NCBI GenBank assembly: GCA_964247055.1
Contig: OZ176053.1
Coordinates: forward strand, 4,526,001 to 4,590,000
Origin: Paragordius varius
Taxonomy: Eukaryota > Animalia > Nematomorpha
Direction: 5' to 3'
Length of the DNA stretch: 64,000 bases
Part shown: piece by piece, positions 9,001-63,435 of the stretch
How the letters are laid out: each line of letters begins with the position of its first letter
How positions within the stretch are numbered: the stretch's first letter is position 1
Notes under the pieces: generated by a model
Seen by the model: only the letters and a program-made list of their open reading frames with translations
Database searches by the model: none
What the model was told of the DNA's origin: nothing
Position numbers and translations under genes: made by a program

Positions 9001-12000
9001 ATGAATTCCGTAGAGTACAAAGTCGAATACAATAAAAATAATAATGATAATCACCATGTAATAGGTGAAAACTCTGAAGAAAAGCATGGAGAGACAAAAC
9101 AATACAGTTATAAACTTTTGGTAGATCCATTTCTACAGGGTACGGAATGTAAAAAAGTATATCGCTTTGATGGAATTATACCAGAGGTATATTTTATTTT
9201 ATGTAAAAGGATCCTATGATGCCCCTAGTTATGGTTAAAGATCCTAGGCGACCATTGAACCATCTCATATTTGGTACAAAAATTTGTGATTTGATTCTTC
9301 CGAGACTGAGGGTAAAAAATAAAATTTATACTTTATATAGCTGGATAAAAATTATATTGGTGAACCACCCGCTTTAGAATTGACTGTAACGAATATAAAC
9401 GATAATATTCGGGAACCATTTTTACAGGATTTGTGTTTTAAGCATGGGGTTTTAGAATCTCTTAAAATTTATTATCATCCAACTACCAAAAAGCATTTAA
9501 CGATTGCCAGAGTAATATATAAGCATGCAAAGTCAGCCAAACAATTTTTAGAAAAAATGCATAATGTATCAGTTATGGGCAACCCTTTGAAAATATTTTT
9601 GGATCCCTTAGGTAATTGCTTTTTAAAATAATTTTTAGGAAAACATTGCCACAAAATTGTCGACAGTATTATACGATCAACTAAAGACAAACCATTTTCC
9701 ATAGATGCATATCTATCTCAACACATATTTAATCAGCATTTGGAAACTAAGACAAATAATGAACTTGTAAATCAAACGAAATCTTCTCACTTAATTTCTC
9801 TCACCTCTTTACCGAATTTACCCAAATTTGATCCAAGATTAAAGAATAACGCCAACGTTAGTATCCCATCGATCAAACTTAACATTTCACAAACGTATAG
9901 TAATGCGCCACCAGACAAAAACGAATCACCTGAAACATCGCCAGCTGATAATGGTGAGAAATTGGAGGATAAAAATTTGCCAACTACTGCATTTTTGCAC
10001 CAATTAACTGCAGTTGCGCCGTCATCAAATGATCCAAAAGAACAACTTTTGGAGCAGCATGCCGAATTTTCCATGTCTTTTTTCCATAATAATAATGCTG
10101 ATAAAACCACCGCTAAGGTGCGTCCAACAAAGAATGACCATACAATACTTGAATCAAAAAAATCTATCATTCAATCCACAAACGATATTGATTACAAAGT
10201 AGATGATCGTGCTGAAGGCGAAAATGGATATGCAAATGATGTTAACAATTATATAAATCACAAGAGCTCAAAAATAGCCATGGACGAGAAACAAGATACG
10301 CATAAAAAATACGCTGATAGAGGAGGGAGAAAATATTCGCATTCGCATCACCACGCCAATAATATTGCTAGTCATAATCATCAACTCGGTTCTCGTCAAC
10401 GTTCACGCAATTTTTCCACCGGCGCATCTCATAAGAAATCGCGAGATTATCATCATGATAAAGATTATGACGATGCGGCGGCAGAATATAATCATCCACT
10501 AGATGAAAAGAATCAAAATAGCGGCATGAGCAAAAAATTTGATATGAAGGATGGTCGCTCTCATAAACGTGATGACGTGATTAAAAATCATGGCCATGGT
10601 GATGATGAGAATGATAAGTATCATAGTAGTAGACACTCAAATAATAATCAACGTGGACATTATTCTTCCAGAAATCGTTACGAGAGACGAAATAACGCCA
10701 ACAACAAAGATTACAACGTTTCACCCAAACGATTTTCGAGAACATCAGACGATCATAGACATAAATCTACTTCCTCGTCATCGTACCGAAAAGATATTAA
10801 GGAGGAAAAGGATGTTACAAAAGATGAAAAACGTGGCTTAGTCAAAAATGAACCAAATTTATCGATAAATGAATCCCCTTTAGTCCTGCCCACACCTTTT
10901 ATACCATCATTTTTCCCTGGTTCTGCTGGGACAGGAATACAACCTGGAGGTAACTCGGCCTGTTTCGAAGGAGCCAATCTCATCAATAATTTGTATGCTG
11001 CGAATCGCATGTCAGAACAACACAAAAGCTTTGTTTTGGCTCAACAAGAACAGGAAAAACAAAATAATTCACATATCGATTCTGTCCACAACAATACAAT
11101 AAAAACAGAGTTTGCCGACTCCCAAAGTGTTCAATGTACAGAAACGGGAGATGCAGAAGATCGTATGAGTGTATCACCTTTAAGTCCTCGAGCACCAACA
11201 CCACAATATTCTTTGAGTGCCCGTACCATCAAAGCGGAAGAAACCAATACCTCCTCGTCGGTTATTATTAGCAATAATGTTAAAAAGGAGCAAGAATCAT
11301 CATCAAAATTATTAGTATCTACAACAACATCAGCGTCTTCATTTTTGCCGCCACATTTAATAAACTTTCAAAACAGCAATAATCAAGCAGTTTACCAACC
11401 TGCACCTAATAACTTTAATAACATGATGTATGGGAGGGGAATGATGTTTCCACCCCCATCATTACCACATGTGCATCATCATCCCTATTTCTCACCATTT
11501 ATGCCACCGCCTCCAATCCCACCTCCCCCTTTATTGAATGGCTCAGCTTTTTATGGCAGTAATATGATGACGCATTTACCACCACCCTTATTCACACTTT
11601 CTCAAAAACATGAATCAAAGATTGACATACCATCTACAAGTATGTTTGACATGAAAAGTAAGGCTAAATTTTTGATCAAAATGATGAATCATATGCTTGA
11701 TTAGTTTAATTTATAATTTAGGCTCGCAATAATATGGGAACGTAAACTCTTAATGTTTTGTTTTATAATATATTGAGAATTATAAAAATCAACGGAGCCT
11801 GAACCGTTTTCATTTCGCATTCCAAGTTTATTTTAATTACTCCTGGTTCGGATTGCGTTTTATATGTTTAAATAAAGTTTTTGAGATTGATTTCCAGGAC
11901 GCAAAAAAAATTAATAAAATTTTGTCGGCATCATGTTTTTTGGTATAATGGTTCAAAATTGTTTATATTTTGATACAATATAAGACAACATTATAAATCA

Positions 12001-15000
12001 TAAAGAGCAAATTGCATATAAAAAGTTTTTAACAGCAAAATTGTGTAAAAAAATAATAAAATATCGAATTATCGAATTTCGTGCTTTTATAGATAATACA
12101 GCACCTTGGTTTCAGCCTTCAAACATTGCACCATCCCTCTTTTATTATCCTTCCATAAATCAAGCCAGTTTGACAGGAACATCGAATGAATTTGCCCCCA
12201 ATGCCGACCTTACATTCTCTTCCTTTTTGAGTAAATTGACACCCCGTTATAAGGTATTAAATTTTAATCTTTTTTTCTTTGTATAAATTAGTAGAAAAAA
12301 ATCCGTTTTAAAATTTTATTTTTTCTATAACAAATTATTTGATTTATTTATTCATGCTTTATTAAATTTTTCAATAATATTTTAGCGATTGATTCTTCAT
12401 GTGATTGCCAAACTTTTGGAGGAGTTAACAGGTGTCATAAACAAAGATATTCAAAAAAATTTGGTGCAAAAATCTGCCTTTTTACTGTACGATAATTGGT
12501 GGTCTTTCCACGAAAAACAACATCAAGTGAATCATTTAATATAATATATATAACTAAATTATAAAAAATAGTTTTAAAGGCGTAATGATTAAAACTGCAT
12601 TATATAAAAAAAATAAATATAGTCATTATGTTTGTTTTAATTTATAGGAAAAAAAGAAAATTGCTATCCCTAGCGCTAAAACTGATCTCTCTGAATCATT
12701 ACAACAAAACTTTTCCACTGATAATACCACATTAAAATCAATCACTGACACCACAAACACCATATTAAATCAAAAAACAAATTATATGTTGATGACGAGC
12801 TCTTCCTCCTTTACGACGTTGGCAAACAATACTTTATCGACATTGCCTTTGTGCACAGCTGACTCATCTATAAATTCAAATTCTTTGGCTAATGCATATT
12901 GGACACCTTCAAACCTAGATACTACCAAATTCCTAGTCAATAGCCTTTACGATAGACCAGTAACAAATGTCGCCGATGCAAATAATAATACAATTCATGA
13001 CACTTTTTCTCTCCTGGGTTTACGGCCAAATATGTCACGGATGCCGTCTTTTAGGGTAGTTATTAATGAGAAATTTTTCACAGTTGACCTCCTTTATGTG
13101 AACGCGATTATGGTAAAATGCATACATAGGTCACTATGTGCGCGTACCATGACTCTTTTTGAAAAAAATAAAATTATTTTTTTTGATCAAAATATATTAA
13201 TTAATATTTCATGCTTATGGTCCATGTCGACCCTCATAGAAATATTTCCTCCATTATTCTCTATCTTCAGTCATTTGAGTTAATATGCTGAGATATAAGT
13301 TGATTTTATAAAATTTTATGATAATTAATATCCCACATATATTCAAAAAATAATGAACAAATTGATTGGTTGTAATTTACAATTTGTTTCGTATTATGAA
13401 GTGAGCTCAACATTCAACAATTATAATTTTAGAATTAGAAGAATAATCAAAAACCGGAATAATTTATAATGATCAGCACAAGTCAATTAATTTATCGGCG
13501 TTATTTATTCAAAATAACTCATTAAGGGAACGTTCACTGTATCAAGTAGGCTACTTAGTCAATTTTAGGATTTTGTCAATTTCGATTGATTTGGCATCTT
13601 ACTTTTTGTCAACGCAAATATTTTCAAAAATACTTGATAGGGTTTATCTCATAAAATGAGTAAAATTCACAAAAAATACGCAATAAATATAAAAAAGATA
13701 TTGTTATTTACATTATAAAGACAACCAATTTTTTTGATTTAAATTTTTTTGTCAAAGTAAGTGCGGGTGCCTCCTATTTACATTTCGAATCATTATTTCA
13801 CAACCTTTAAATCAAGGACCAAAAAATATGGTTGTTTAAAGAAAAAACGGTATGTTGCATGTTACCTCCATATATTTTAAATTTTACTATAATTATATAT
13901 ATGTGCGCTTACAGAAAATTAAAAAACCCATACCAGTCCCAGTCCCCACTGATGAAAATAAAGATGAAGAATCAAGGCATAAATCTAATCGATACGATGA
14001 CAAAAAATATGATCAACACAAACATAGGCACTCTTCGTCCCATCATTATTCCAAACATGAATCATCTAATAAAAATCATTATGGCGATCGAGGTTATATT
14101 CCCTGTATAAATCAAATTTTTAGAAATATGGTCTTTTTTTACCCTAATGTTTTTTAGTAATATGAGCATAAATATTTTGATTGGCAAGCTCAAATAATAT
14201 CCAACTCACAAAAATTGATAAATTATTTCAGATGTAACAAAAATTGAGATTTAAGTGTCTTTCTTATAGAATTTACTTAATAGATCTCCCCTTCTCAAGT
14301 TTTAAATGACAATTTTTTCCAATTTCTAATTGGTAAGATGGAAATTACACCCATTCAAAAACCAACAAATACTTAGATCAATTAATTTAATCTTTTTTGT
14401 GTAATAAAATAATTTCTGGTTCATAGATTCTCATTATCATCGCAAAAATAAGCACCGTAGTAGCGATGAAAGAACTCCCTCTCCTTATGCCAGAATTACT
14501 TCAGCTAAAATCCCAGCTTCATCTTACACAAGAGATGAGGATCGGGAACATAGTGCTAGGAAAAAAGGTATGTTATCAGAATATTTTTATATATTTTATG
14601 AAACTTTTATTCTTGTAAACAGCGAAAATTCATGATACAATGTTTATATCTCAAATTAAACCGAATTACTTTTGAAAAAATACAGTTTATACAAAATTCT
14701 TTGCTTTAATAAATAAGAAAAGCAAAACAAAAAAGCTATTCTACCTGTTTTATAATTGTAAAATCTGTTTTATACATTTGTTGTATCTATTGATATATCA
14801 GAATGTTTGTATGGGTTATATTAAATTGTTACTATTTTGATTTTGATATTTGTGGCTAATATTTAATTTATGCTCTCATTGGTATTTAAGCTCTTTGTGA
14901 ATCTACGAAAATAATGGGACAAAGAATTTAATTTTTGGCTAAATAATTTTTTCTTTTAAACGTCTCAAGATGAAGTATATGACACATTATCGAATATTTA

Positions 15001-23000: not shown

Positions 23001-25350
23001 ATTTTAAAAGTATGGTTGTCTTTTGGAAAAAAAATATTTGTCTTTATATTTTTGCGCTTTTTCCGTAAAATTTCAAGTTTTACTGTAATAGACAACTCAT
23101 TTTTTGGTAGTTTCATGCAATTGAAATGGGTCATACCAATAAAATATGAGAATAATAAGAATATGTAAACCAATTATTTGATACCTGGGCTCTCTCAAAC
23201 GTATCCTTGAGACGGATATTAATTTTATCCTTCAGGACGGAAATTAAACTTTGTTTGATTGCCTCAGGATCTATGGGTGAAGCGTGATCTACAAACCCAC
23301 ATTATATACAGTAAATATAAAAATTCTACAGAATAAAATAAACTTATTTAAATATATTATCGTAGTTTAAAATAATGATCAAAGGTGTAAATTGGTTACA
23401 TACTCAATATCAAAAAGTATGGTTGCCTTTTTAAAAATATTTTCATATAGTTTTTACATTATGTGTCTATAATTTTCAAATCTCACTGTTTATAGAGCTA
23501 TAAGGATCTTGGTTATGTGCCGTAATATATTGCTGATGGTTTTGTGTAGGGCTCGGGTGTGGAACGAAATTTGGATTCACCGGATATGGCAAATTAGTGG
23601 GATTTGGAAATTGTATTTGATTTTGGTTAACGGGGTATGGTGCGAATCCCGTGCTTTGAACATCTTATACACAATAAATGGTAAAAAATGCTTTAATTTA
23701 ATTTGTATCTCGATTATTATTATTATAGTATTTGTCATAAAAACAGAAAACCATAAGTCATATATTTAAACTCTGAGCGTAAAACTATATTAATATAAAA
23801 ATAGATAAAAACGTTTCTGAATGGTCCCTAAAAAACTGATACTATAGCTCTTATGGTTTTGGATCCATATAATTGTAGTATAAGTAGAGAATATAGAGAG
23901 AGACGATAGAGAATTGAATATACCGACAATATTAGTTATAGCTTATATGTACGTTAAAGGGAAAAAACTTTGGTATGGTTAATGGATTGAACAATATTTT
24001 ATGTTTATGATAATTTACTCGTGTTGAATGAATGTGGCAAATTAGGATTATAATTTTGAGGATTTGCTTGAGGAATTGTTTGATGTAAAGACGCCCCAGT
24101 GTTTTGTGAAAAAACTGGACAATATTCTGCGAATACGGCTTGCATGACTTGAATAGCAGAGGTTAAATCATGAGAACTCTATAAATATATATTTAGATTA
24201 AAATGTAGAAAAATGTATTTAAAGATATAAATTGGTTTTACACTTTATATGTGGCAAAAGCTTAAGGATTTTTATTTTAATATATATTATGATAAAACCA
24301 CATGGTCGATATTCTAATCGTAAAAAGGCAGTAAAATCTTTGATCTTTAGGTTTAAAAATTAATTGATATCAAAAAACGATTTTGCTTTTAAATGCGAAC
24401 ACAAAAATAATAACGTAGATTTTTTTATAAGCTTGCGTATTACAATTGTTAAGTAGCTAAATATTAGGGTTTAAATCAGTCACAGAAATATAAAAAAACA
24501 CTTTTAAACTTGGAAAATTCGACATTTATCTTAAAATAATGTGTAGTTTTTCATTATCAAAGCGAGTTAAAATACTAAAATTTATATTTCATATTAAAAT
24601 TATTAATTGCCTACAAATGGTTTTCGACATAAAAGTTTTTACAAATTACAATTGCTAATTAAAAAATTAAAATTTTGTTAAACTTATATGATAAATATTT
24701 AAAAGGACTTAAATATATTTTACAAACCAAAATAACTGTTCTGGATAAATGGGATTAATAGTTTGCGCACAGTCGTAATTAAATAAAAAGGTTGAATGAT
24801 ATCCAACGTAGAGTGCTAATTTTTTAAAATTATTATCTGCACTCTACGTAAAATATATAATAAAATAAAACAATGCAATATATATTTTAACTCTATAAAA
24901 TAATAAATTAGATTAAAAAGCAAAGTATGCATACCTTCCAATCTTTAAAATATGGCAAATATATTTTCCCATCCATATCGATATATTTGGATGGTTTAAT
25001 TACCATGTTCGCAGTTGGCACGATAAAACAATCTGGTGGACTAGACGGATAATTTTCAGGAATCCATATGAGTATGGGAATATTATAAGTTTTACCTACT
25101 TATAAAACGTCTAATTTTACCTTTATATGTAATTGGAATAGTACCATCTAGCTTAACTAATTCTCGTTTATGACCATAAAAGTTTTTGTAAATATAAACA
25201 CCTAATGAACTAGGTAAATTTGAAAAATTTGTTTGCGCAACCTGTAAGTCTTTTTTAACCCGATCCGAATGCTTATACTATTAATTCAATAAAAAATATT
25301 CATACTTTGCAAGAATTAACTAAAGAATTGGTATAGGTCGTATTAATCAT
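20069..25350 (-). CDS. TSG101: TSG101 / Vps23 (ESCRT-I)
   Basis: Exons 25350-25306, 25277-25121, 25095-24935, 24178-24019, 23663-23487, 23288-23185, 22684-22592, 22244-22066, 20726-20624, 20152-20069. UEV motifs GTIPITYKGKTYNIPI and GKIYLPY, Pro-rich linker, coiled coil, SB core PIYKQILEAVAEENA..NIRDLSRKQF. Introns 28, 25, 756, 355, 198, 500, 347, 1339, 471 nt. Largely absent from the ORF track. Confidence 0.93.
20279..20530. mobile_element. MITE family A (TIR AAATTATACGGACAAAACG...), copy in last TSG101 intron
   Basis: Terminal inverted repeats. Related full copies at ~22806-23075 and ~40306-40554, and partial copies near 23330-23480, 38600 and 54490-54690. Confidence 0.75.
20924..21268. 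mobile_element. MITE-like element with ~60-bp imperfect terminal inverted repeats
   Basis: ATGATTTTTGGAATGC..GGACACATGGGTA on the left and TACCCATGTGTCC..GCATTCCAAAAACTCAT on the right. Confidence 0.55.
22806..23075. mobile_element. MITE family A copy in a TSG101 intron
   Basis: TGAAATTATACGGACAAAACG left end, TCCGTAAAATTTCAA right end. Confidence 0.75.
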
Positions 25351-29495: not shown

Positions 29496-30061
29496 ATGGC
29501 CCTACCATACAAGGGTCCTGGTCGTATGGTATGGAAGGAAGGAGAACAGTACGACATAACAGTGGAAGAAAAACGTCGGATAATCGAAAGAGGAAAAATT
29601 TGGGACAAAAATCGTTTGACTCACGACGTCAGAAGTCAATATCCATATCTTAATAATATCAATTTAAGAGATTCGGTACGTTGTATGATATTTTTTTGGG
29701 GAAGTGATTCTCGTTATAAGTATCATTTTTATAACGACACTTCTTTCCCGATATTAACAATTTTTTGATGAGAGGAGTTACTTAAGAAATGTATACCTAA
29801 CAGATACAAAATTTACATATTTTAGTGGGATCCAGCCATAGAAAGAACTAATGCCATTTTAAAAGCAAGAGGAAGATATTTTAAGCCCAATCTTAAAACC
29901 TTTATGTATGCCGGACCCATAATTATTGGATTATATTCGCTTATATACATTTGTACTATACCTAGAGTATTATTTATACTTAATTATAGCAAAAATTTTT
30001 GACAAAATGTGAAAAAGGTGAAATCCCTTATAATCAACGGTCATTTTGGTTTCCAGATTAA
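29496..30061 (+). CDS. NDUFB4: NADH:ubiquinone oxidoreductase subunit B4 (B15)
   Basis: Exons 29496-29675, 29826-29966, 29990-30061 (introns 150 and 23 nt). YDITVEEKRRIIER, WDPAIER, YFKPNLK, a single TM segment and GEIPYNQRSF match the NDUFB4 pattern. Confidence 0.8.
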
Positions 30062-33250: not shown

Positions 33251-34756
33251 TTAATCTCTTTCTCTCTTTCTGAAAAATTACCATGATAAAAGTATATAAC
33301 TCAAAAATTAGAATTTAAATCACTCAGACATAAATAAATAGCATTAATATATATTTTTGACCCAGACAAAAAATGTTACTTTAAATTTTCATCATTTCCG
33401 TTTTGTTCGCAAGTCTCACCTGACTATAATGTATTAAAGGCACAAATTAACTTGCTGAATGTTACTCGAAGTTGCATGCGATTGATTTTCATCTTCAACT
33501 GTAATATCAAAATTTGGGTGACTTCTATTATATTTACTGTTTGACAAAAAATCTGTAAATAAAGGAACCACAAAACCTGCCATATTGATAGTGCCATCTC
33601 CTTCGCTAAAAAATTGTCGTTAAATATATAAGTTTAAATAAATTAATTAAAATATGAGTATGGACCGTGATAAATGAATAAAAGGTATGTGCCAAATATT
33701 AGAATTATCTGTCAGATAAATCTACACAAGTTGCGAGTCAATATATCCAAATATATACATATAAAACAATAATAATTATAGGAAAGGGTGACAGTTTGGG
33801 TTTTTGGAATCATTTTCAAAGATATTATTAAAATTTTTATAAACCACAATTTATGGGTAAGCGATGAAATACAAGCCAACATTCTTTTAACGTATTTAAA
33901 TTTTATTTGTGTTTACAATTTTTAAATAACATAAGCGAAAGTTTGATTTGAGTTAAATTAGTAAGAATTTGCAGACATGAATTTTAATACAAAAAGGGCA
34001 TAATTATAAAAGTTAGGATAATAACAAGTAAAATCCATTCTAACAAGTAATTTTTTATGTCTCAATATAAAAATTAATCATTTTTGCTCTTTTTATAAAA
34101 GTCGAAAATGATGTAATTTAAATTCAATGTACTTTATGGGCAAATAATTTTTTACCTTAATAAAAATCTGTTTAAGGAAATAATGTAAAGAACAAAAAAT
34201 ATATTTTATGTCCATATACCCCAAATTTAAATATTTTAGAATACATAATGTTGATAAAAAAACTATAATATGACACATGAAAAAGGATATGTGGCAGCTA
34301 TCTCTCATTATAAATACCTGAATGGAGTAAATTTGATAGATGGAATTTTCATAAAAGCTCGTTTTACAGCTGGAGGCATTGGAGGAGGTGTGGATTTATA
34401 TTTATTGAAACATTCACTCTGGGATATTTCGGGTAATGTTTCTTTATCCGGCTTACATATCTTTTCTTTAGGTTTTCTTAAATAATTATGTGTAATTTAC
34501 ATTTCCGATGTTTTTTCGATTTGTACTTTAAGTAAATTGTCTAATTCCCGTAATTTAATTAGCAATTTGGGATCAAAATTTTGATTGTTCCATGATTCGA
34601 TATCAGACTATATAATATTAAATAATGTGATGTTACCCATTGATTTTCAATTTTTTGTTTTAAATTATCCAAAAAATTGCTTTCCACCTTCATGATATAT
34701 CCATTATCAATAATATTGCGATAGTAATCACACATTTTATTATATTCATCGTCCAT
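33251..34756 (-). CDS. Unidentified ~200-aa protein (orphan-like)
   Basis: Exons 34756-34637, 34607-34501, 34476-34318, 33605-33452, 33423-33380 and tentative 33269-33251 join in one open frame through GT-AG introns of 29, 24, 712, 28 and 110 nt. No family recognised. 3' end uncertain. Confidence 0.65.
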
Positions 34757-34813: not shown

Positions 34814-35315
34814 ATGAGGCTGGCCAATGTAAAGTCGTTATTGGGGCAATCTAATCGCATCTTTGTACGATGTTTAAATTTGCAAGAATATCAGAGTAAA
34901 AATTTGATGGAAAAGTATGGTATTGCCGTTCAAAATTTTAAGATTGTTGAAAATCGGGCGCAAGCTGCGCAAGTTATTGATGAATTAGGTTTAGATTTTT
35001 TTAAATATAGATTATAAAAGTTACGTAATTAAGGCTCAAATTTTGGCAGGCGGTCGGGGGAAAGGTCACTTTGATAACGGTTTTAAGGGAGGCGTTCACA
35101 TAGTTGATGAGTATATAAACTTTTAACAGTATAGTCCACACAAAGTACCCAGTATCGTCGATAAAATGATTGATCATAAGCTTATAACCAAACAAACATC
35201 ACCGCAAGGTGTATTAGTAAAGAAGGTATGCAGTTAATTTTACTATATTGACAAACAGTTTTTTTTATAAATGTATGCTAAAATTTAATTTACTTGCTTA
35301 CTGTTAGGAAATGGC

Positions 35316-48048: not shown

Positions 48049-48472
48049 ATGGCCGAACGCCCTGAAGATTTAAATTTACCAGCCTCCATAGTAGCTAGGA
48101 TAATCAAAGAATCTGTATCTATTAATTTATTGTAGCTGCCTGAAGGAACAAATATATCCAAAGAAGCCAGAATTGCAATTTCTAAAGCTGCTAGCGTTTT
48201 TATTCTTTATGCCTCATCAACGTATAGCTTAGTTAAATAATTTCGTAGAGCTAATGCTTATGCAACAGACGCTAAACGGAAGACTTTAACAGCAAATGAT
48301 GTTTTAAATGCTATTGAAGAAATGGGATTCGAAACTTTTATTGAACCATTGAAATTAGCTTTAGACTGTAATTACTAATTTATATACTTTAGCTTTTCGC
48401 CGTAAAAAAATCGAAAAACGAAACTCAACACCACTTGAATCAGAGATTGGTGAACCCTCTGAAGCTTCATGA
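48049..48472 (+). CDS. POLE3: DNA polymerase epsilon subunit 3 / CHRAC17 (histone fold), 116 aa
   Basis: Exons 48049-48114, 48136-48221, 48249-48367, 48393-48472 with introns of 21, 27 and 25 nt. Translation begins [57 protein letters not shown]. Absent from the ORF track. Confidence 0.95.
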
Positions 48473-48532: not shown

Positions 48533-50535
48533 TTAACTTTGTCTTAATTTTGCCAATCTTTGACTAAGATCATCTTGTTCTACTGTTGAAGCTACTGCTG
48601 TTGAAGTCGCTGTTCCAATATTTGTGCTTAATTGACTGGGAAGTTCCATTTTAAGTTCGATTCTATATAAAACAAATAAATTAATTTGTGTTTTTAAAAA
48701 ATTTAAATGTAATTTAAGTAATAACTCTTAGAGACAAATTGGTTTTAAGTAAATAAATAAAACGGCAGGATTTGCTTTTTCACAGATTTTAATGCACGAA
48801 TGTTATTCTTTATTATTCATTTACACTTAACCCTTAAAAATTTCAAACCCTTGATTTCAATTTCAAACTAAAAATAAATTAATGAGTTTTTAATCATTAA
48901 AAATTACGTGTTGATATTTTTAAATAATTATTTCATTTAACATAATACATAAAAAATGATAAACTATACCATAAGGAAATATTTATCAATATTAAATAAA
49001 TTAGCTCAAAAAACATTATATTTTTAGCGTGGATTTGAAAGGTTCAAAGTTATTATGGATTTGTAGTCAGAGGTGAATTTAAAGTTTTAAGGGTAAATTT
49101 GAGGTTAAATATATTTGATTTTAAACAGGTCTGAAAACCCAATTTAAATTTTAAACAATTCATTCTATAGATGTGATATGCGTAAGGGGTTAGGCTTTTC
49201 AAAAGAAACAATTAGAGAAACAAATAAAAATTGTATAAATTTAATTTAGTTGTAATATCTTTAAGTATAACAAATTTGATATTTTTATACATAAAGTAGT
49301 TGGAAGAATTCTTTCAGGCGTCATCTTTATGTGCAACCAATAAAAAGTATATATTTACCTTAATCTGAATTGTTAACTCAGTCATGGTAATTTCGCATGA
49401 TGTAAAAAAAATACATTTTGTGGTCACTTATACCACCTCTCAAAAGAGATTTAAATTGTATTCAAAACTTCACTTTTATACATTTTATCAAGTAAAAACA
49501 ATTTGTAAAGTACCCGGCTTCGTCGGCAGCTTGAATCATTAATTTATCGATTTGTTCCTGAGGAGCTGTGATAGTTGTCGTTGATGTCATGGCATTATCC
49601 ATACATTTTGATTGCACATCTAAATCTTCGAATTCTTGTTCAAATTTGTCCATAAGGGCAGAAACTTTTTCAAGATTCATGGATTGCATAGCGGTATCCA
49701 TCGCTTTAACAACACCAGTCATTGAACCGGTTATCTTAAACATGACACATATAGAATATAAACTTAAAACTACATTTATAAGGGTAAATTCAACAAAAAT
49801 AAACAAAATAAAACTGAAAATATGAACTAATATGTGAAAAGAGTTATACTACCTATGAATAATATCTAATACTTATGGTTAAAATTATTTAATTGTTCAG
49901 CATGGTTTAAACAGGATAAGAATTGGAAAGTTTTTACTGGAACCGAAACCAATAGACGTTTTTGGGAAAAAAATATAATTTTTTAAAATCGGCTACAAAA
50001 TTCGGTTTAAAAAATGATTTTATATATGATTTCTATTCTTTAAAATTTATAAGACGGTTCACCTTTATATTTCATTTTTTTAAATTATTTAAATGGTTTT
50101 TTTTTTCATAAAAATAGCAGTTGGATACACTTTTAAAAATAATAGAGAATATAGGCTATTTGTAAATTTGTATGGAAAAATCACTAATGATAAATTAATT
50201 TTACGGTAACCGAACTTTTTTAAATTTTAAAAAATACCTTTTTCATTGCTGATGCTGTTTGAACTCGATTACTTACTGCATCAATCCTGGCACTCATTCT
50301 CAAATAATTTAAAGCTTCATTCTTTTTTCTAATAGCAGTTTCAGCGTAAATTTTAGCCCCTTCCATATTATTATTTTGTATGGCCTAACAATGACATATT
50401 AATATTACTTTTTTCAATTTGTTTTTTTGTTCAACTTCTTCTTTTTCGCATCGTCTGGCATTCCTCAACATATCTTTGGAAGCGAACTTTAAATTGAATA
50501 TATATTCTAAAATAAGTATAAAGCCTACTATCCAT
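48533..50535 (-). CDS. CHMP1: CHMP1 / Did2 (ESCRT-III associated), CHMP1B-like sequence
   Basis: Exons 50535-50529, 50506-50409, 50384-50238, 49734-49514, 48662-48533 with introns of 22, 24, 503 and 851 nt. Motifs FNLKFASK, AETAIRKKNE, MNLEKVSALMDKFE and the C-terminal MIM DDLSQRLAKLR. Confidence 0.94.
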
Positions 50536-54195: not shown

Positions 54196-57100
54196 TTATT
54201 TATTTTTGGATGTACTACTGCCTAACACTTTTTTTACAATTTTAAAATGTTTTTCGTTATTTTTTATGTCATCATAAATTTCATCTTGATCCTCCTTTGA
54301 TGTCGTTTTTCGATATGATTTCATAATGTCAAAATGTTCGTATGGTCGAGCTATTTTATCGCGATGTGCCAATTCACGTTCAGTGAAATAAGAATCTAAA
54401 TCTTTGATACCTTTTAGTTCCTGTATTTCCCATTTTTCTCGCCATGGTCGAGGCTTCATAACAACCTAGACATATAAAGAAAATTGTAATTAAACAGAAA
54501 AAACGTAAAACATATAGCCAAATATTTTTTTTAAAAAAACAACTATGCTTTATTAAACCTTAATTTTTCCTATCATTCAATTATAATTTAAAAATATATA
54601 ATTGATTGTGTTACCAATTTATACAACTTTTCATATTTTGCAATTTAAAACAATGATTTAAATAAATAATAATATCTATTTAAAAAAGTACAGCGGTATG
54701 TAAATAAAAGAGGAGGAGTTAAATTAAAATATTGTTATACTGTGAAACCCTTATAATGACATCCTTCTCTTGATACAGTGCCACTTAATTAATTAATACT
54801 AATCACTTTTCTAATTTTGAATAAGGCTTTAAAATTTAGTAATCTAAAGTTGGATATGCCTCTCTACTAACTTACAAGTTTGTGGGTATTGAACCTTAAA
54901 AATGAGCCAAAAAATTCTAATCTATATATTTATAAAAATGGAAAGTGGTGGCTTTCTGTCTGTTTCCGGAAAACCGGCACACCCATTCAAATCCGAATGT
55001 CGAAAAAATATAATCATTTATAAATGCCCCGACAATAGCTTGGCCCTTTTTTGAATTAGGCCCCCAGTCCGGGCCCACCCCGTGTGAAAAACGGTTTCGT
55101 GTCTTTGAGACAATTTTCCGGGAAACGTGTTGGACCATTCGATTTCAAATAAGATTTTTATTTACTTTTTGATTGTGCCGAACATAGTCGGCTCACTTTT
55201 TAAATTTAGGCCCTCTTTTTACCCGCTCCTTCCGTAAAATGTCATCCGCTAAAAACTGATCCGTCATATCGAAAAAGCGTGCCTTTTGGGCTAAATTTCA
55301 GAAAACCTATCAGGTCATATGAGTTCAATAGCTGCTTAAAATATTACCCGTAACGAGGCACAAATTTTGGCCGTGCGGTTTTTTAAAATTAGCCGTTAGT
55401 TAGGCCCTTCACGCCCTGATTTTTTAATTTTAGGAATTTTTTCCAAAAACTAATGAGAGCATATGTAATCAATCATGATTCCAGGTATTCTCCGTAAATA
55501 GGCAAAAATTTTAATCAAGCGCTTTTTTTGTATCAGCCTCTGGGTAGGCAGCTACCCGCCTAAAACTGCGTCACATATCAAAATTGCGTTGTTTTGGAAC
55601 TAATTTAAAGAAAACCTAGGACATATGAGTTAAAGTTCGAAATAGTACCCGTAACTAGGTAAAAACTAAGGTAAGGCCTTTTTTTATTGGCCGTTAATTT
55701 GGGGCCTTTATGCCCTAAAATTACGCCATCATATAACGATTATTTAGTGTTATTGTATTTCGAATAACCCCTGAGACGATGGTTTCAAAGATGATTCCAA
55801 ATATTTTCCCTATAAAGGCCAAAAATTTAACTTAGTGCTTTTTCCATATAGGCCTATGGGTAGGGTCTACCGGTTTAAAACTGAGACGCCATACGAAACC
55901 GGCGTGGCTTTGGAGCTGATTCCAAAAAACTTAAGAAGCCATACGAGTTCAATAAAGGCTTTATATATTATTCATAAAAAGGTAAAAATTATAGTATAGC
56001 GGTTTTTTCAGTTAGCCGTCAATTTGGGGCCTTTACACCAGTAAACAATATATTAGTATGAATGCACCGTTTAGAAAATCCTATGAGATCGACTATTAAA
56101 TAATGTTTCGAAATAATCCACATATATGGATCTTTTATTGATCCCCTTTTTCAAATAGCCCGGCCAGAAGTCCAAAGGACTTCCTCGGACTGCGTAGCAG
56201 CACGAGATTTACCTAGTTATCTATAAAATATATTGATAAATAGAAAAATGAATAAATTTTATAGATATTTAAATCAGGGGTGTCCAACACAAATACCTTG
56301 ACGGCTGTTTTGGTAATTCTTCTTTTTATATTTATTATGAGCCATTCTAAAAAGTCGTATATTTTTTAACAATTTTTATATTTTTAACATTTTAGCATAC
56401 CGAAAAAACGTGTTAGACATCCCTGATTTAAAACATGATTGCGGATAATCACCCAATTTTTTCCGATCATCGAGGTATAATGATGAGAAGTCTACTGTAT
56501 ATCCCTAAAAAGTTGATGATCCCATTTAAATTTTTAAAAAGCCAAGAGCTTTTGTCGACAAAAAATGCTACTTTCATTTTGCTTAAAAAGGGAATTTTAC
56601 ATATATGGTGTAATACTTTTTTCATTTTTCAATAATCTTAATTTTAAGTGCAATTTAAAAATGTTTTCACAATCAAGTTAGGTTGGCGCCATTAAAAATA
56701 CTGTTTTATATCTTAATTATTGTATTAGATAAATATCACCGATCACACTGTCAAATCTTTCTAAAAAATGTATAATTTTTGGAAGTCGTGTAAGGAATAT
56801 TACGTTTTCCGGGGAAATTAGTGATAATAAACGGATAAAAAGTTTTAAAAACACATTTTTCAGAATAAAATCAAGTCGAAAGTTTTTACAACTTTTAAAA
56901 TGTTATATTTTACAACTTTTAAAATGTTATAAATCAAATCCAATTTATATAAAAAAATTTTTTATGGGTTCAAGTGGTTAATCATGATATAAAACTCTAT
57001 TTTATCTTAAATTTTTTCAGTTGTTAAATTAGCGATTTAGCACTTTAACTTTGTTCTATGTTTCATTGTATAAAAGTAATAAAGCGTTAACAAGGCATTC

Positions 57101-58795
57101 GTCAACAATTATTTTATTTAGTAATCATTCGATCAATTTCTAGGGTATACTGTGTCAAACGCCTTTTAATATCAAAGAAAGGGTGATAGATATTATCTTC
57201 TTTGCTTTGGTAATTATCCCCCAGTTATGATAGGGTATAGATCGGATCTATTGTGCTTGTGTTTCTTGAAACGCAAATTGCATTGGATTGATGGATATAC
57301 CTTCCCTGAATTTATTTTCTAAAACTGATTCTTGACGGTGTGTTCAAGGAGTTCAGAAAGTCGATAAAAAACATTAATTCCCTTTAATTTTTATATATAC
57401 CAATTAGTATGTTTTCATCCTTCAAAAATTTTATCCCTAATTGATTATATGGAAAAGATTTTGAAGTTGGTCTGATATAATAATATCATTTGTAAGCTCT
57501 GTACACAATGAAAGTCTTTAAATCAGTTCTAGAAGATATATTAAACGATTATTCATCAATCAAATACAATGGATCCCAATATAACACAAGTTCAAATCCA
57601 GAACTTTAAAAAACTCAGGAATAAATAACAGAGCAAATGGGAAATAAGGGAAAATATTGTTGAATGGCTTGTTAACACCATATTAATTTTATATGATGAA
57701 CATAGCAAAGTTGGACATCCCTAAATATACCGAAAACTTTTAAATTAACGCAGGCCTTCATCAGGGTTTTTTAGCCCCTACTCTTTACAACGGTTATAAT
57801 GTAAATGAAAATTCTCGAACGATTTCATATAAAATGTTATACGATAATTCAATACACAATAATTCTAATTACAAAGATATAGAAATATTTCGAAAATGGA
57901 TTAAAAATCAAAAACAAAACTAAAATCTTAAATAAAATCGAAAAAGTGTTGGGTTTAACTGAATTCTGTTGGTAATTTTTACTGTGGATCCAAAAGCTGT
58001 GTGATTTTTTATAATATTGTCATCCTACTGATGCTCTTAAAATTTCATAATTATCCGTTAAATTTTATAGTCAAATCATCAAATAAAAATTAAATTTTTT
58101 TCGCCCTCGCTATTTATTCATAAGAAATATATGATAAAAATAACCTGAGTAGTGTTAATGGGAACTGGATCGTTTGGAGAATGAAATGTTTTTGGCATGT
58201 TGGGATCAAAAGTGGAATATTCAGGTAGCGCATCTTTAAGGTATAATAAGTGATCATCCAATCTTTTTTCCAATCTCAAAACCTCAATTGATAAGATGGT
58301 GGGATTGTACATTTCGTAAGAGATTTCCATACCTGTTTAAATAAATATATATATGGTACCCATATTATCGATTACATTTCTTAGCATAAAAAAGTGTCTC
58401 ATTCCATATTCGGCACGTAGTATACACAATCCTGTAAATTTGTTTATTTTTTGGTCGCAATAGGGATCTGATACAGTCACAGTCATTATTGATCCTTTAA
58501 TTAAACAAGCAATTTACCGACATAAAATTCAGGAATATTAATTTGAGAACGCCGCTTTATCATGTCATTTCTTTCCAACATGTGGCATAGTTTGTTCTTC
58601 TTGGTCCAATCAGCATTGTTTGGTAAAAATTCTGGATAAATAAACCTGATACTAGAAATCACAAAACCTGTATTCTCTAACGGTTTTGTCAACAAGCTGT
58701 TGTTCATCTGCATCTTCCATAGGTATTCCATAAAATTTTTGAATAAAACGAAAATTTGAAAAAGTTAAGGGTTTTAAACATCTTTTCACTAACAT
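54196..58795 (-). CDS. MRPL19: Mitochondrial ribosomal protein L19 (bL19m)
   Basis: Exons 58795-58668, 58645-58518, 58494-58360, 58332-58145, 54465-54196 with introns of 22, 23, 27 and 3679 nt. Motifs RFIYPEFLP, IPEFYVGSI, LRLEKRLDDHLLYLKDALPEYSTFD and MKPRPW. Confidence 0.95.
54921..56216 (+). mobile_element. Non-autonomous Helitron with internal ~310-bp tandem repeats, in MRPL19 intron 4
   Basis: A|TC start, CTCGGACTGCGTAGCAGCACGAG hairpin, CTAG|T end. About three diverged units start near 55251, 55562 and 55878. Confidence 0.85.
56275..56425. mobile_element. hAT-like MITE
   Basis: TIR CAGGGGTGTCCAAC / GTTAGACATCCCTG with an 8-bp near-duplication ATTTAAAT / ATTTAAAA. Confidence 0.7.
57100..57700 (-). 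mobile_element. Possible decayed Penelope-like RT C-terminal fragment
   Basis: A long, mostly open minus frame with scattered stops. LYLIDE*SFNISSRTDLKTFIVYRAYK*YYYIRPTS resembles the FLDLxI..LKTSVYRKPT..YLH segment. Confidence 0.35.
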
Positions 58796-59928: not shown

Positions 59929-62741
59929 CTAAATGCCATTTATTAAATAATCTTCTATAAATTTATATTTACAAACAGTAATGTTCTTATCCTCATTCTT
60001 TTCAAGGTAAAAACATCCGTACATATTTATGAGTTTCCGTTGAAAATCTGTGATAATCTAAACATGAACATATATAATATATTATATAAAATAGCTAGGG
60101 GGATGGATAAATAGTTTAACCTAAATTTTATGTAAATTAAGAAAAATGCTCAATTAAAAAATCTAATCTATGGGTCATTATTGATTTTTAATATATGTTA
60201 AACTAGACATTTTTCTTAACTATCCATATTATAAAGAAAAATCTATAATTAGTTTTAACCTGGAGTTTCTTTTTCCTCGATGTTTCGTCCTTATTCATAG
60301 ACAATTTCTAGATAAAAAAATCATTATTGATGTTTATACCTCAAATTCAAATGATGAGATCGTAGCCAATTTCGTCAATACCTAATTTATAAAAATGTAA
60401 TATTCATTTGGTTTGGATAATTTTTTTATGAAATATAAAAAATAAATCCAATATTTTATAATTTAATATAAACATTGTTAGAGATAAAGGCATCTACACA
60501 ACCCGTCCCATCCGTCAATTTAACTTGAAGAACCCAACCTGCTTGAGGGTGGCGTTGTAATTTAGTTAGTAAAGTGTGAATCATACCCTACATCAATCAG
60601 AATTAAAGTTTGTAAAGATAAAACATAAATATGTCGAATTAAATGTTTTTTAATAGCCACAATTTTTAAAAGATATACCATATTTTTAGATTCTTTATGT
60701 AACTTTGATTAGGTTTGTTAAATAGGGGTTGTCAAATACGAATTCAGAACTCTTCAGATCAATAACCATTATAATATAAATAGAAAAAACGGGTCTCATG
60801 ATAGCTTACTTTTAAATTGCGGCTCTTACTGACTTTATTGAAGCAATTTAACAATATTATTTTCTATGAAAATTTAAGTACCATAATAACGAATGGTTTT
60901 TGTACATCTGTTTTATCCATGTTTTGATTTTGATTATTATTTAACCATGTTGAAATATGGATTAAATAATTTAATTGATCCATTTTGCAATTGTGATCCA
61001 ATGTATTAGTGTCTTCCCTCTTTTTATCAGGGCTAACTGGAGTAGGTATATTGAGACAAGTATCATCCAAATCTAAAATATTATCGGCAACTAAATAAAT
61101 CATATAAGTAATGCATAATACTTGTCTCATCAAGATCTATACTTATAGGAATAATTTCTTTGTTAGTTATAGGCTTAGATGAAGTTGGATGAGGGCTATT
61201 AACAGCAGTTATTTCCAAATGTGATAAATCTAAAATTGATTTATTTACACTATTACTTGGTAAATTATCTTGAAGTATTTTATTTGTGGCAGGTTGTTTT
61301 AGAGTCATATTATCGGTTTCTAGATTATATTCTGTACCAACATTACAAGACAAATCCATGATTTTTTTAACATTACCATTATGAATTAAGGATATATTGG
61401 GTATGGCTTTTTCAACGACAACATCACAATCATTTCTAATTAATAATTATTAATTAAACTTTCAAAAGTAAATGGCTTAAATCGAAATCTAACTTCGTAT
61501 ATAAATTGTCCGAAAAAAATTAAGAATTTTTATAGTATCCAACCTTTAATGTTTAAAATAATGTTTTTTAACATAAAAAATCGTTTGGTAGTTGGCAACA
61601 TCCTTAAATTAATACTAAGTAGATCAAGTTAACAATCAATAGTTGATTGAAGCGCTAATATGCATTAATCGATTTAAAATTATTAACAAAAAGTGTAATT
61701 ATTTTTTTAATCTCAGAGCAAAGGAAATTTGGCAAGGCGAAAATTGCTAGCAATGATTAATTGTGTAATTTTCATGCATATATTAAACTTTAAACGGTTG
61801 CAAAAAAATGCCTAAATTAACCATAATATTAAGTATTTTTAAGTGATCTCAAAGTTTTTACCGCTAACAAAATCACCTTTAAACATTTCAAATTCACTCT
61901 TGAAGATTTCAAAATCACTTGGGCTAACTAACTCATCTAATAAAATATTATTTAATTATCGGTTTATTATGCTAAATTTAAAGAAAGTATTATTTATAAA
62001 TAAAAAATAGGTATTTTTTTATTTTTAAAAATATGAGTTATTTAGGGCAAATTTAAAAGGTTCGAGGATGATGTATATATCGATTTAAGATAATTTGAAA
62101 AAACTCAAATATAAAAAAATTTATACAGTGAAGAAGGTTGAAGGGTTTCATCCATCGGCAACAAATGCGATCTATATATTTGTAACATTTTACTCAAAGT
62201 TGTTATCATTGTTATATTTGTATTTTTGGATTAAATTGAAAACGTGTCCTCCCAAATATTGACAATTGTTCTTCCGCAATAAAATAATCCCGTATCTTAC
62301 TTCAAATTCGCCATGGATAAGTATTTTACAACCAGGATAAATTAATTCAACAAATTTATCGAATTCAAATGCATGAAATATTTGATAACCATCAGTAACT
62401 GTCAAATACCGGTTTTCATGCGAAAAAGACTGTTTTATATAAAAAAAACTTGCCTGAGATTTTTCGAGTTCGGTTCCATATATATCAAATTTATGAATAT
62501 GGGAATATCCAGATTTTAAAATATCCTTAGCCCAAAGTAGTTGTAAAAGTAATGGGCCTTTGAATGCTTGACATTCAACCAAATTTAAATCTGGCAATTG
62601 ATTTATACGCTTATATTTGGAAATATCAAAAGATTCTGTAATGTCATAATGCATAGCTTCTTTAATAAGCTCATCACCTATAGATTTTCTATTTTTAGCC
62701 CAAAGTTCATTTAAGAATAGATAAGTGCATAAAGCTGGCAT
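59929..62741 (-). CDS. RMI1: RecQ-mediated genome instability protein 1 (BTR complex OB-fold protein)
   Basis: Exons 62741-62194, 61435-61122, 61090-60882, 60587-60474, 60381-60340, 60307-60260, 60057-59929 with introns of 758, 31, 294, 92, 32 and 202 nt. N-terminal OB motifs LTVTDG and PGCKILIHG..YLGGHV. C-terminal OB motifs GWVLQVKLTDGTG and FQRKLINMYG. The C-terminal OB distinguishes it from TDRD3. Confidence 0.85.
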
Positions 62742-62798
62742 TTAAATTTAGGGATTTCAAAATATTAATTCATACATTATGTCATTTGCCAAATTTAA
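62742..62798. promoter_or_regulatory. 57-nt head-to-head spacer, RMI1/CCDC174
   Basis: ATG at 62741 (-) and ATG at 62799 (+). Both are preceded by AAATTTAA on their own strand. Confidence 0.55.
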
Positions 62799-63435
62799 AT
62801 GCACTCTTTGAATTCAATTATATCCACAGGAGTATTTATTTTAATATTATAAATCTTTTTACATAGTTTGAACATATTAAAAAGGATTATTTGCGGAAAA
62901 AGGCACAGCAAAATGAATCAAAATGCAATACTGTCAAAATGGAATCAGAGGGACAAACATTAAATGTTATAATTAATAAACCCAAAGTAATATATTATTG
63001 AGATATTTATTTATAGGATAAAGAATTTAAAATGAAAGTCAGAAGTAAGGAAAGTAATTATCGAAGGAAAAAGGACGAAACAGAAGACGAAGATTATGAA
63101 GAGCAAAGAGTTATTCTTTCAAAGTATGATTCTTTAGTACTTGCCAATTTTATTTTTCAAAATTTATTATATTATTTTACTAGGAAACGTTTATTGGCAA
63201 AAAGCAAAGTTTATGATAAATTAACCCATACTCTCCCAAACGATGATATTAATTCACTCTACAGTGTTGATTTCCAAAGAAAATACTTGGAAAATGACGA
63301 TTCTGGCAAAGAGTTTATTTTTTAAAATTAAATATGTAATCAGAGAAGAATATAAAGAGTATCCAGATAAAGAGCTTAAAGTTTCTGAAGCAGTTCATTT
63401 TCAAGAAGTTTTTGGAGACGGTAATATCTTTAAAA

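What the first reader, a model, noticed from the sequence alone, without database searches (positions are those of the whole stretch)
9187..63343. A class of 21-35 nt spliceosomal micro-introns in a metazoan genome that also has kilobase introns
Seen: 24 GT-AG introns of 21-35 nt are needed to assemble 10 genes. Lengths are SETD1 23/29/27, TSG101 28/25, NDUFB4 23, orphan 29/24/28, SUCLG2 22/24, POLE3 21/27/25, CHMP1 22/24, MRPL19 22/23/27, RMI1 31/32 and CCDC174 35/30/31. Retaining any of them breaks the reading frame or introduces a stop. They are nearly pure A/T, often lack a polypyrimidine tract, and many carry a (C/T)TAAT-like branch candidate. Known: typical animal minimal introns are roughly 45-70 nt, and introns this small are described mainly from ciliates, nucleomorphs, microsporidia and dicyemids, whose genomes are uniformly compact. 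Inference: here one spliceosome must handle 21-nt and 3.7-kb introns in the same transcript. That points to a modified splice-site recognition system, with intron definition at the steric limit alongside exon definition. Standard gene finders with a minimum-intron filter would mis-annotate many genes in this genome.
Basis: partly seen in the sequence, partly recalled or inferred. Interest (0 to 1): 0.92.

Follow-up and report, generated by a model that had tools for sequence, protein, structure and literature searches.

The report
Tiny 21-35-base introns, hairworm genes
Ordinary housekeeping genes of this AT-rich animal genome (most likely a horsehair worm) start with runs of very probably genuine introns only 21-35 bases long, followed by introns of hundreds to thousands of bases. 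That would make hairworms a third animal lineage with introns under 30 bases, but no RNA data were available to show the cutting.

Summary
The RMI1 32-nt and orphan 28-nt ones were not found.

For 10 of them, tool coordinates show that removing exactly that segment restores gap-free colinearity with Pfam models, a solved fly CHRAC-14 chain, or full-length homologues. These are POLE3 21/27, CHMP1 22/24, MRPL19 22/23/27, TSG101 25 and SUCLG2 22/24.

The best CHMP1 relative is from Gordionus (Nematomorpha). Its gene has annotated introns of 53 and 38 nt at the same CDS positions as the window's 22- and 24-nt ones. Exons align without indels, and substitutions fall mainly on third codon positions.

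MRPL19 combines 22/23/27-nt introns with a repeat-bearing 3,679-nt intron. The micro-introns form uninterrupted runs at gene 5' ends.

No RNA evidence was obtained: the runs laid were DNA or empty. The branch-motif claim is not above chance, and the "modified spliceosome" idea is untested.

The same two-class, 5'-clustered layout is published for flatworms (peak 37 nt). Introns under 30 nt are published only for dicyemids and myxobolids. Earlier follow-ups in this scan reported the same thing on other pieces of this genome.

The parts
9187..9209 (+). SETD1 intron 1, 23 nt
   Evidence: GT-AG. Joins open frames of 87 and 34 codons. Colinearity with human SETD1A is from memory only.
9312..9340 (+). 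SETD1 intron 2, 29 nt
   Evidence: GT-AG. The downstream exon is the SETD1 RRM (PDB 8ily/3s8s, E 2.6e-20).
9612..9638 (+). SETD1 intron 3, 27 nt
   Evidence: GT-AG with an in-frame TAA. Joins the RRM exon to a 687-codon exon.
25278..25305 (-). TSG101 intron 1, 28 nt
   Evidence: GT-AG after a 15-codon first exon. Too short for a tool-based homology test.
25096..25120 (-). TSG101 intron 2, 25 nt
   Evidence: Pfam UEV: exon 2 ends at profile position 44. A split codon and one residue follow, and exon 3 residue 2 is position 47.
29967..29989 (+). NDUFB4-like intron 2, 23 nt
   Evidence: GT-AG and ORF continuity only. The gene name is not confirmed by tools.
34608..34636 (-). orphan gene intron, 29 nt
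   Evidence: GT-AG. Joins open frames of 42 and 36 codons. No homologue found.
34477..34500 (-). orphan gene intron, 24 nt
   Evidence: GT-AG. Joins open frames of 35 and 55 codons. No homologue found.
34989..35010 (+). SUCLG2 intron 1, 22 nt
   Evidence: Pfam ATP-grasp_2: exon 1 ends at profile position 37 and exon 2 residue 2 is position 40.
35111..35134 (+). SUCLG2 intron 2, 24 nt
   Evidence: Pfam ATP-grasp_2: exon 2 residue 31 is position 62, exon 3 residue 3 is position 67, and exon 4 starts at 95 after 94.
48115..48135 (+). POLE3 intron 1, 21 nt (shortest)
   Evidence: Against PDB 2byk_B (CHRAC-14), exon 1 matches residues 1-21 and exon 2 matches 23-49. The intron ends in an in-frame TAG.
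48222..48248 (+). POLE3 intron 2, 27 nt
   Evidence: Against CHRAC-14, exon 2 matches 23-49 and exon 3 residue 4 is residue 55. In Pfam CBFD_NFYB_HMF the exons match 19-38 and 44-65.
48368..48392 (+). POLE3 intron 3, 25 nt
   Evidence: GT-AG. Joins the histone fold to a basic/acidic tail. If retained, the protein stops after 3 codons.
50507..50528 (-). CHMP1 intron 1, 22 nt (after ATGGATA)
   Evidence: Same CDS position (nt 7) as a 53-nt annotated intron of Gordionus CHMP1.
50385..50408 (-). CHMP1 intron 2, 24 nt
   Evidence: Same CDS position (nt 105) as a 38-nt Gordionus intron. In the DNA alignment, indels fall only inside the introns.
58646..58667 (-). MRPL19 intron 1, 22 nt
   Evidence: The spliced model aligns across this junction with full-length bL19m homologues.
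58495..58517 (-). MRPL19 intron 2, 23 nt
   Evidence: The junction EFYVG|SIMTV is gap-free against EFYVGSILAV in homologues.
58333..58359 (-). MRPL19 intron 3, 27 nt
   Evidence: Pfam Ribosomal_L19: exon 3 residue 43 is position 65 and exon 4 residue 2 is position 69. Homologue alignments are gap-free.
61091..61121 (-). RMI1 intron, 31 nt
   Evidence: GT-AG. Joins open frames of 108 and 74 codons in an unconserved linker. Gene identity comes from the RMI1_N_C domain upstream.
62832..62866 (+). CCDC174-like intron 1, 35 nt
   Evidence: GT-AG after an 11-codon first exon. Weak support; the gene name is not confirmed.
62987..63016 (+). CCDC174-like intron 2, 30 nt
   Evidence: GT-AG with an in-frame stop. 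Joins open frames of 40 and 102 codons.
63313..63343 (+). CCDC174-like intron, 31 nt
   Evidence: GT-AG; removes a frameshift and stop. ORF evidence only.
54466..58144 (-). MRPL19 intron 4, 3,679 nt (long class)
   Evidence: The junction NTTQ|VVMKPRPW is colinear with homologues. 721 nt of the intron have copies elsewhere in the window.
49735..50237 (-). CHMP1 intron 3, 503 nt (long class)
   Evidence: Same CDS position (nt 252) as a 2,291-nt Gordionus intron.
48663..49513 (-). CHMP1 intron 4, 851 nt (long class)
   Evidence: Same CDS position (nt 473) as a 4,527-nt Gordionus intron.
24179..24934 (-). TSG101 intron 3, 756 nt (long class)
   Evidence: The exon 3 match to Pfam UEV ends at position 98.
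35226..35544 (+). SUCLG2 intron 3, 319 nt (long class); followed by introns of 1,115, 584, 338 and 511 nt
   Evidence: Pfam ATP-grasp_2 positions 94 and 95 lie on either side of it.

Best explanation
These are genuine U2-type GT-AG spliceosomal introns that have shrunk to 21-35 nt (median 25). They sit in the nuclear genome of a nematomorph (horsehair worm) that is related to, but distinct from, Gordionus montsenyensis.

They form a separate size class. It occupies the first one to three (in the CCDC174-like gene, four) intron positions of a gene, as an uninterrupted run. Downstream introns of the same genes are 150 to 3,679 nt and carry interspersed repeats.

Shown here: GT-AG ends, frame disruption if retained, exact colinearity with orthologues once removed, orthology of two of them to annotated 53- and 38-nt introns in Gordionus, purifying selection on the host gene, and presence of the segments in independent DNA reads.

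Inferred, not shown: they are removed from the pre-mRNA by the ordinary spliceosome through intron definition. The retained signals would be GTA at the 5' end, an A/T-rich body with some adenosine serving as branch point, and (T)AG at the 3' end, with no real polypyrimidine tract. The long downstream introns would be handled in the usual way.

The two classes most likely reflect different mutational and selective regimes: deletion bias with tight constraint near the 5' end, and repeat insertion downstream. A second splicing machinery is not needed to explain them.
For: - GT-AG in 22 of 22, and A at +3 in 19 of 22. A+T is 82% against 69% in 30+30-nt exon flanks. Lengths mod 3 are 8/8/6.
- Exact profile or chain continuity across 10 junctions: SUCLG2 and CHMP1 pieces, TSG101, MRPL19 and POLE3, and POLE3 against the solved CHRAC-14 chain.
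- MRPL19 against full-length homologues.
- The CHMP1 model is 173/200 identical to the Gordionus protein, with no gap at any junction.
- Gordionus CHMP1 has introns at CDS nt 7, 105, 252, 321 and 473, of 53, 38, 2,291, 112 and 4,527 nt. The window has introns at nt 7, 105, 252 and 473, of 22, 24, 503 and 851 nt.
- In the DNA alignment the only indels fall inside the two small introns.
- Codon-position differences are 22/11/81, so the gene is under purifying selection.
- DNA contigs of runs X1, X4 and X5 cover the micro-introns without gaps, so these are not assembly insertions.
- Taxon: the best hit is Gordionus sp. m RMFG-2023, and the G+C content matches the 26.9% published for Gordionus.
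Against: - No RNA evidence. The only runs that could be laid were DNA-like (X1, X4, X5) or empty (X6). No joint skips a micro-intron.
- RNA-labelled runs of the same species label hold none of the words.
- About half of the 22 rest on ORF continuity, or on similarity recalled from memory (SETD1, NDUFB4-like, CCDC174-like, RMI1, orphan).
- A generic scan that joins ORFs is not above shuffles.
- No branch-point motif exceeds chance.
- Orthologous-intron evidence exists for one gene only.
Confidence: 0.85

Rival explanations
1. The segments are real introns but are spliced inefficiently or conditionally. Such retained or 'detained' introns would throttle expression, as reported for the very short introns of microsporidia. 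Much of the mRNA would then keep them.
For: There is no detectable branch motif or polypyrimidine tract. PMC13644364 cites a median splicing efficiency of about 25% for microsporidian short introns. No RNA data here exclude this.
Against: The host genes are housekeeping genes under purifying selection. Every retention gives a frameshift or a stop near the 5' end, in up to three consecutive introns per gene. That would make most transcripts useless.
Confidence: 0.1
2. The segments are not removed at the RNA level. They would be small insertions in decaying pseudogenes, or errors of the long-read assembly.
For: The genome is AT-rich and repeat-rich, and a blind ORF scan finds as many such candidates in shuffled sequence.
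Against: All 22 are bounded by GT and AG, against a chance of about 0.0017 per exact pair. The exons are otherwise intact, and CHMP1 shows a 22/11/81 codon-position pattern. Two segments sit at positions of annotated introns in another genus. Independent DNA contigs from three runs contain them unchanged.
Confidence: 0.02
3. The segments are excised from DNA, as with ciliate internal eliminated sequences or nematode programmed DNA elimination, or they are bypassed during translation.
For: The sizes resemble Paramecium eliminated sequences. The DNA runs are of unknown tissue.
Against: The ends are GT...AG, not TA...TA. DNA contigs of three runs carry the segments, and no contig lacks them. The orthologous Gordionus segments are annotated as introns of a predicted mRNA. 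No precedent is known in this clade.
Confidence: 0.02

Closest known systems
Flatworm microintrons (Opisthorchis felineus and other trematodes, cestodes, monogeneans, Macrostomum; PMC6530080)
   Same: A two-class intron length distribution in large, repeat-rich genomes. The microintrons lie next to one another and preferentially at the 5' end of genes. They often lose the polypyrimidine tract, coexist with introns of about 3 kb, and are missed when annotation software uses a high minimum intron length.
   Different: The flatworm peak is at 37 nt (with a second at 90 nt), against a median of 25 nt and a minimum of 21 nt here. The phylum is also different (Platyhelminthes, Spiralia, against Nematomorpha, Ecdysozoa), so the origin is independent.
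Ultra-short introns of myxobolid myxozoans and Dicyema japonicum (PMC13644364; Lu et al. 2019, PMC6736024)
   Same: Animal introns under 30 nt (medians 22-27 nt). Signals are reduced to GTa...AG, the introns are A/T-rich with no clear polypyrimidine tract, and the hosts are parasites.
   Different: There, short introns dominate compact genomes of about 20-200 Mb. Here they are one class, confined to gene 5' ends, beside kilobase introns that carry repeats. That paper surveyed 51 animal genomes and reports no other lineage with such introns.
Orthologous introns of Gordionus sp. m RMFG-2023 (G. montsenyensis) CHMP1
   Same: Identical intron positions and phases (CDS nt 7, 105, 252, 473). The order is the same: small introns at the 5' end, long ones at the 3' end. 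The introns are AT-rich and GT-AG.
   Different: The Gordionus introns are 53 and 38 nt rather than 22 and 24 nt. Its long introns are 4-5 times longer, and it has one extra 112-nt intron.
Ciliate and nucleomorph tiny introns (Paramecium about 25 nt, Stentor 15-16 nt)
   Same: They show that a U2-type spliceosome can remove introns of 15-30 nt.
   Different: These are unicellular lineages in which all introns are tiny. Ciliates also avoid 3n introns that lack stops, which could not be assessed here with n = 22.

Membership tests
U2-type GT-AG spliceosomal intron | GT at the 5' end and AG at the 3' end | tested here: met
   22 of 22. A at +3 in 19 of 22 and T at -3 in 16 of 22.
U2-type GT-AG spliceosomal intron | Removal restores a reading frame colinear with orthologues; retention disrupts it | tested here: met
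   10 junctions show exact continuity in Pfam, PDB or homologue coordinates. All 22 shift the frame or add a stop if retained. The other 12 rest on ORFs or memory.
U2-type GT-AG spliceosomal intron | Position shared with an intron of a related species | tested here: met
   CHMP1 only: 4 of 4 positions are shared with Gordionus. Other genes could not be fetched.
U2-type GT-AG spliceosomal intron | Absent from mature mRNA | tested here: inconclusive
   The runs laid were DNA or empty. Run X11's word share (0.71 against 0.69 expected for spliced RNA) is only a lead.
U2-type GT-AG spliceosomal intron | Branch-point adenosine in a yUnAy-like context, and a polypyrimidine tract | tested here: inconclusive
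   Motif counts equal those of composition-matched shuffles (P 0.24-0.48). The 3' half is T-rich, but no more than the rest.
Animal ultra-short introns (myxobolid / dicyemid type) | Introns shorter than 30 nt with signals reduced to GTa...AG | tested here: met
   17 of 22 are under 30 nt and the median is 25.
Animal ultra-short introns (myxobolid / dicyemid type) | Short introns dominate a compact genome (genome-wide median under 30 nt) | tested here: not met
   The same genes carry introns of 150-3,679 nt with repeats. The genome-wide median cannot be measured from one window.
Flatworm-type microintron class | A separate short-length peak beside a long-intron peak | tested here: met
   21-35 nt against 150 nt or more in the modelled genes, with one 60-nt candidate between them.
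Flatworm-type microintron class | Microintrons adjacent to each other and biased to the 5' end of genes | tested here: met
   In SETD1, TSG101, SUCLG2, POLE3, CHMP1 and MRPL19, and in the CCDC174-like and orphan models, they form an unbroken run from intron 1. The exception is the NDUFB4-like gene (150 nt, then 23 nt).
Flatworm-type microintron class | Length peak near 37 nt; taxon Platyhelminthes | tested here: not met
   The median is 25 nt. The closest protein is from the nematomorph Gordionus.

The most novel reading that the evidence does not exclude
Hairworms would have an independently evolved, cap-proximal class of micro-introns, reaching 21-25 nt in this species. This class would be genome-wide and efficiently spliced.

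Because common aligners and gene finders ignore or mishandle introns this short, part of the reported 'rampant loss of universal metazoan genes' in Nematomorpha, and their BUSCO scores near 70%, would be an annotation artefact rather than real gene loss.
Probability: 0.3. Interest if true: 0.8.

Novelty: new member of a known kind. Interest (0 to 1): 0.62.

Why it matters
A September 2026 survey of 51 animal genomes (PMC13644364) states that introns under 30 nt occur only in myxobolid cnidarians and dicyemids, both with compact genomes. It predicts that more cases will turn up. This window, like other pieces of the same genome flagged earlier in this scan, points to a third and independent case, in an ecdysozoan.

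The genome is not compact. In one transcript, 22-nt and 3.7-kb introns must both be removed. The comparison with Gordionus (53 and 38 nt at the same sites) catches the shrinking in progress between two genera. That makes the rate and direction of intron shortening measurable.

In practice, gene models for hairworm genomes built with default minimum intron lengths will lose start codons and 5' exons. This bears on the low completeness scores and the gene-loss claims for this phylum.

Tried and rejected
1. Blind scan for GT(A)...AG segments of 18-40 nt that join open frames. It gave 100 candidates against a mean of 81 in shuffles, so it is useless as evidence and was dropped.
2. My first guess was a dicyemid or orthonectid. 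I rejected it after the Gordionus best hit and the G+C match.
3. RNA evidence. Read laying on X1, X4, X5 and X6 gave only DNA-like coverage, or nothing. The second run search turned up X11 only after the single read-laying run had been used.
4. NDUFB4. The word-index search found nothing, PDB searches of exons 2 and 3 gave nothing meaningful, and the Atlas hits were noise.
5. Fetching a Gordionus MRPL19. I searched with a profile of the window's exons aligned on an Anopheles scaffold. The scaffold's insect relatives filled the list.
6. The representative search gave good full-length bL19m proteins but no nematomorph one.
7. Gap counting at junctions in a 89-sequence CHMP1 alignment was swamped by rare insertions, so I discarded it.
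8. Branch-motif enrichment was not above chance.
9. Rfam found no RNA gene in the window.
10. Cunha et al. 2023 (Curr Biol) and the supplements of PMC13644364 are not held. I could not check whether hairworms were among the 51 genomes, or whether intron sizes were reported.

Full report
**What the window is.** The window is 64 kb at 23-36% G+C and contains no Rfam RNA gene. It carries ordinary animal housekeeping genes. These were confirmed with tools:
- SETD1: RRM against PDB 8ily/3s8s, E 2.6e-20, and a SET domain
- TSG101: UEV domain
- SUCLG2: ATP-grasp_2
- POLE3/CHRAC-14-type histone fold
- CHMP1: Snf7
- MRPL19: Ribosomal_L19
- RMI1: RMI1_N_C

The 'orphan' has no hit.

**Whose genome.** The closest protein to the CHMP1 exon comes from Gordionus sp. 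m RMFG-2023, at 77% identity against 70% or less for all others. Over the whole spliced protein the identity is 173/200. The published Gordionus montsenyensis genome has 26.9% G+C. Earlier notes of this scan had already suggested a horsehair worm. I tested that lead and it replaced my first guess of a dicyemid. The organism is a nematomorph but not G. montsenyensis itself.

**The observation.** I rebuilt the gene models from the sequence. 22 of the 24 claimed segments exist at exact coordinates, all GT...AG. They are 21-35 nt long (median 25) and 82% A+T, against 69% in the flanking exon sequence. Lengths mod 3 are spread evenly, 8/8/6. Each one shifts the frame or brings in a stop if kept.
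- The RMI1 32-nt and orphan 28-nt introns were not reproduced.

**Why it is more than chance.** A blind scan that joins ORFs is no better than shuffled sequence (100 against a mean of 81). So ORF continuity alone proves nothing in this AT-rich DNA. The weight lies in homology coordinates.

Each exon was searched on its own, and in each case below the counts add up exactly across the junction:
- SUCLG2 exons 1-4 match ATP-grasp_2 positions 1-37, 40-62, 67-94 and 95-145.
- TSG101 exons 2 and 3 match UEV positions 2-44 and 47-98.
- MRPL19 exons 3 and 4 match Ribosomal_L19 positions 35-65 and 69-101.
- POLE3 exons 1, 2 and 3 match fly CHRAC-14 residues 1-21, 23-49 and 55-86. This covers the 21-nt intron, the shortest.

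The spliced MRPL19 aligns with full-length bL19m proteins without a gap at the four junctions. GT and AG each occur at about 4% of positions, yet all interruptions defined in this way are bounded by them.

**Comparison with another genus.** The Gordionus CHMP1 locus was fetched, and its exon structure was solved uniquely against the annotated protein.

| | Intron positions (CDS nt) | Intron lengths (nt) |
|---|---|---|
| Gordionus | 7, 105, 252, 321, 473 | 53, 38, 2,291, 112, 4,527 |
| Window | 7, 105, 252, 473 | 22, 24, 503, 851 |

- In a DNA alignment of the 5' part, the exons align without any indel. The only two gaps fall inside the two small introns.
- Differences by codon position are 22/11/81, so the gene is under purifying selection and is not a pseudogene.
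- The two micro-introns are therefore shrunken orthologues of introns already annotated in a relative.

**Two classes and their layout.** The intron lengths in 5'-to-3' order come:

| Gene | Intron lengths in order (nt) |
|---|---|
| POLE3 | 21, 27, 25 |
| CHMP1 | 22, 24, 503, 851 |
| MRPL19 | 22, 23, 27, 3,679 |
| SUCLG2 | 22, 24, 319, 1,115, 584, 338, 511, ... |
| TSG101 | 28, 25, 756, then long |
| SETD1 | 23, 29, 27, then roughly 1 kb (estimated from ORF spacing, not modelled) |
| CCDC174-like | 35, 30, (60), 31, then long |
| NDUFB4-like | 150, 23 (the one exception to the 5' rule) |

The 3,679-nt MRPL19 intron carries at least 721 nt of interspersed repeats that have copies elsewhere in the window. 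So micro-introns form unbroken runs at gene 5' ends and are followed by long introns that carry repeats.

**Is the DNA right?** Contigs of three runs (X1, X4, X5) cover the POLE3 and CHMP1 micro-introns without gaps. They are therefore not assembly insertions. X1 may be the very sample that was assembled.

**RNA.** No direct evidence was obtained.
- X1, X4 and X5 behave as DNA, with even depth over introns and intergenic DNA. X6, labelled RNA, gave nothing.
- A later search showed run X11, from the same sample as X1 and X3, with only 24 M letters of contigs. It holds 0.71 of the sampled words of the MRPL19 5' stretch. Full removal of the introns predicts 0.69, and the same sample's DNA runs hold 0.96-1.00.
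- X11 did not hold the POLE3/CHMP1 stretch, and I could not lay it. It is a lead, not a result.

**Interpretation.** The introns are very probably real.
- The branch-like motif is as common in composition-matched shuffles.
- Nothing in the window bears on the spliceosome.
- For myxozoans with 22-27-nt introns, conventional U2 snRNA and U2AF were reported.
- The premise that such introns live only in compact genomes overlooks flatworm microintrons. Those have a peak at 37 nt, sit next to one another, are biased to the 5' end, often lack a polypyrimidine tract, and lie beside introns of about 3 kb. That is the same architecture.

**What is new.** The size is below 30 nt, which is so far published only for myxobolids and Dicyema, and the phylum is new. 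Neither the Gordionus genome preprint nor a four-species hairworm comparison mentions introns at all. The main hairworm genome paper could not be read.

**Verdict.** This is a new member of a known kind. The same feature was already reported by earlier follow-ups of this scan on other pieces of this genome, also without RNA evidence.

Noticed in passing
It lies after a 5-codon first exon (ATG at 8928-8926) of a DUF726/TMCO4-like gene. That gene's long first ORF otherwise has no start codon for about 95 codons. The gene lies head to head with SETD1.
   Followed up: partly
window 63124-63183 (+): A candidate 60-nt GT-AG intron in the CCDC174-like gene. Its length is a multiple of three and it has no stop, so the ORF reads through it. 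The hydrophobic stretch it would encode looks out of place in a charged coiled-coil protein.
   Followed up: no
window 62172-62193 (-): A candidate 22-nt GT-AG intron directly after the RMI1 OB-fold exon. The 5' end of RMI1 (62742-62880) could not be modelled with any GT-AG intron.
   Followed up: partly
window 54472-54660, 20280-20543, 22792-22983, 40302-40381; also 54913-55246 / 1913-2274 and 56040-56237 / 1670-1857: Two interspersed repeat families at 73-90% identity. One copy abuts the 3' splice site of the 3.7-kb MRPL19 intron.
   Followed up: partly
window 43197-44097 (-): A decayed Tc1/mariner-type transposase (Pfam DDE_3, E 1.2e-11), broken into several frames.
   Followed up: partly
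window 50880-51630: A tandem array that reads as repeated FKLVLEHFKLVLEQ-like peptides on both strands, just upstream of CHMP1. (TA)n microsatellites lie at 63440-63480 and elsewhere.
   Followed up: no
window 48472 / 48533: POLE3 (+) and CHMP1 (-) converge with their stop codons only 60 nt apart. Intergenic DNA can be very short even though introns reach kilobases.
   Followed up: no
L001 8001-15621 (Gordionus OX940784.2): One of the two deposited Gordionus CHMP1 proteins (CAK9295429.1, 'partial') lacks the first three residues. These are encoded by the 7-nt first exon ahead of the 53-nt intron. It is an example of a tiny 5' exon being lost from a gene model.
   Followed up: yes
runs X5 and X6-X10: A run labelled as another organism (B) carries this locus at low depth with near-identical sequence. 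RNA-labelled runs under the window's own species label carry none of it. Either labels are wrong or cryptic species are involved.
   Followed up: no
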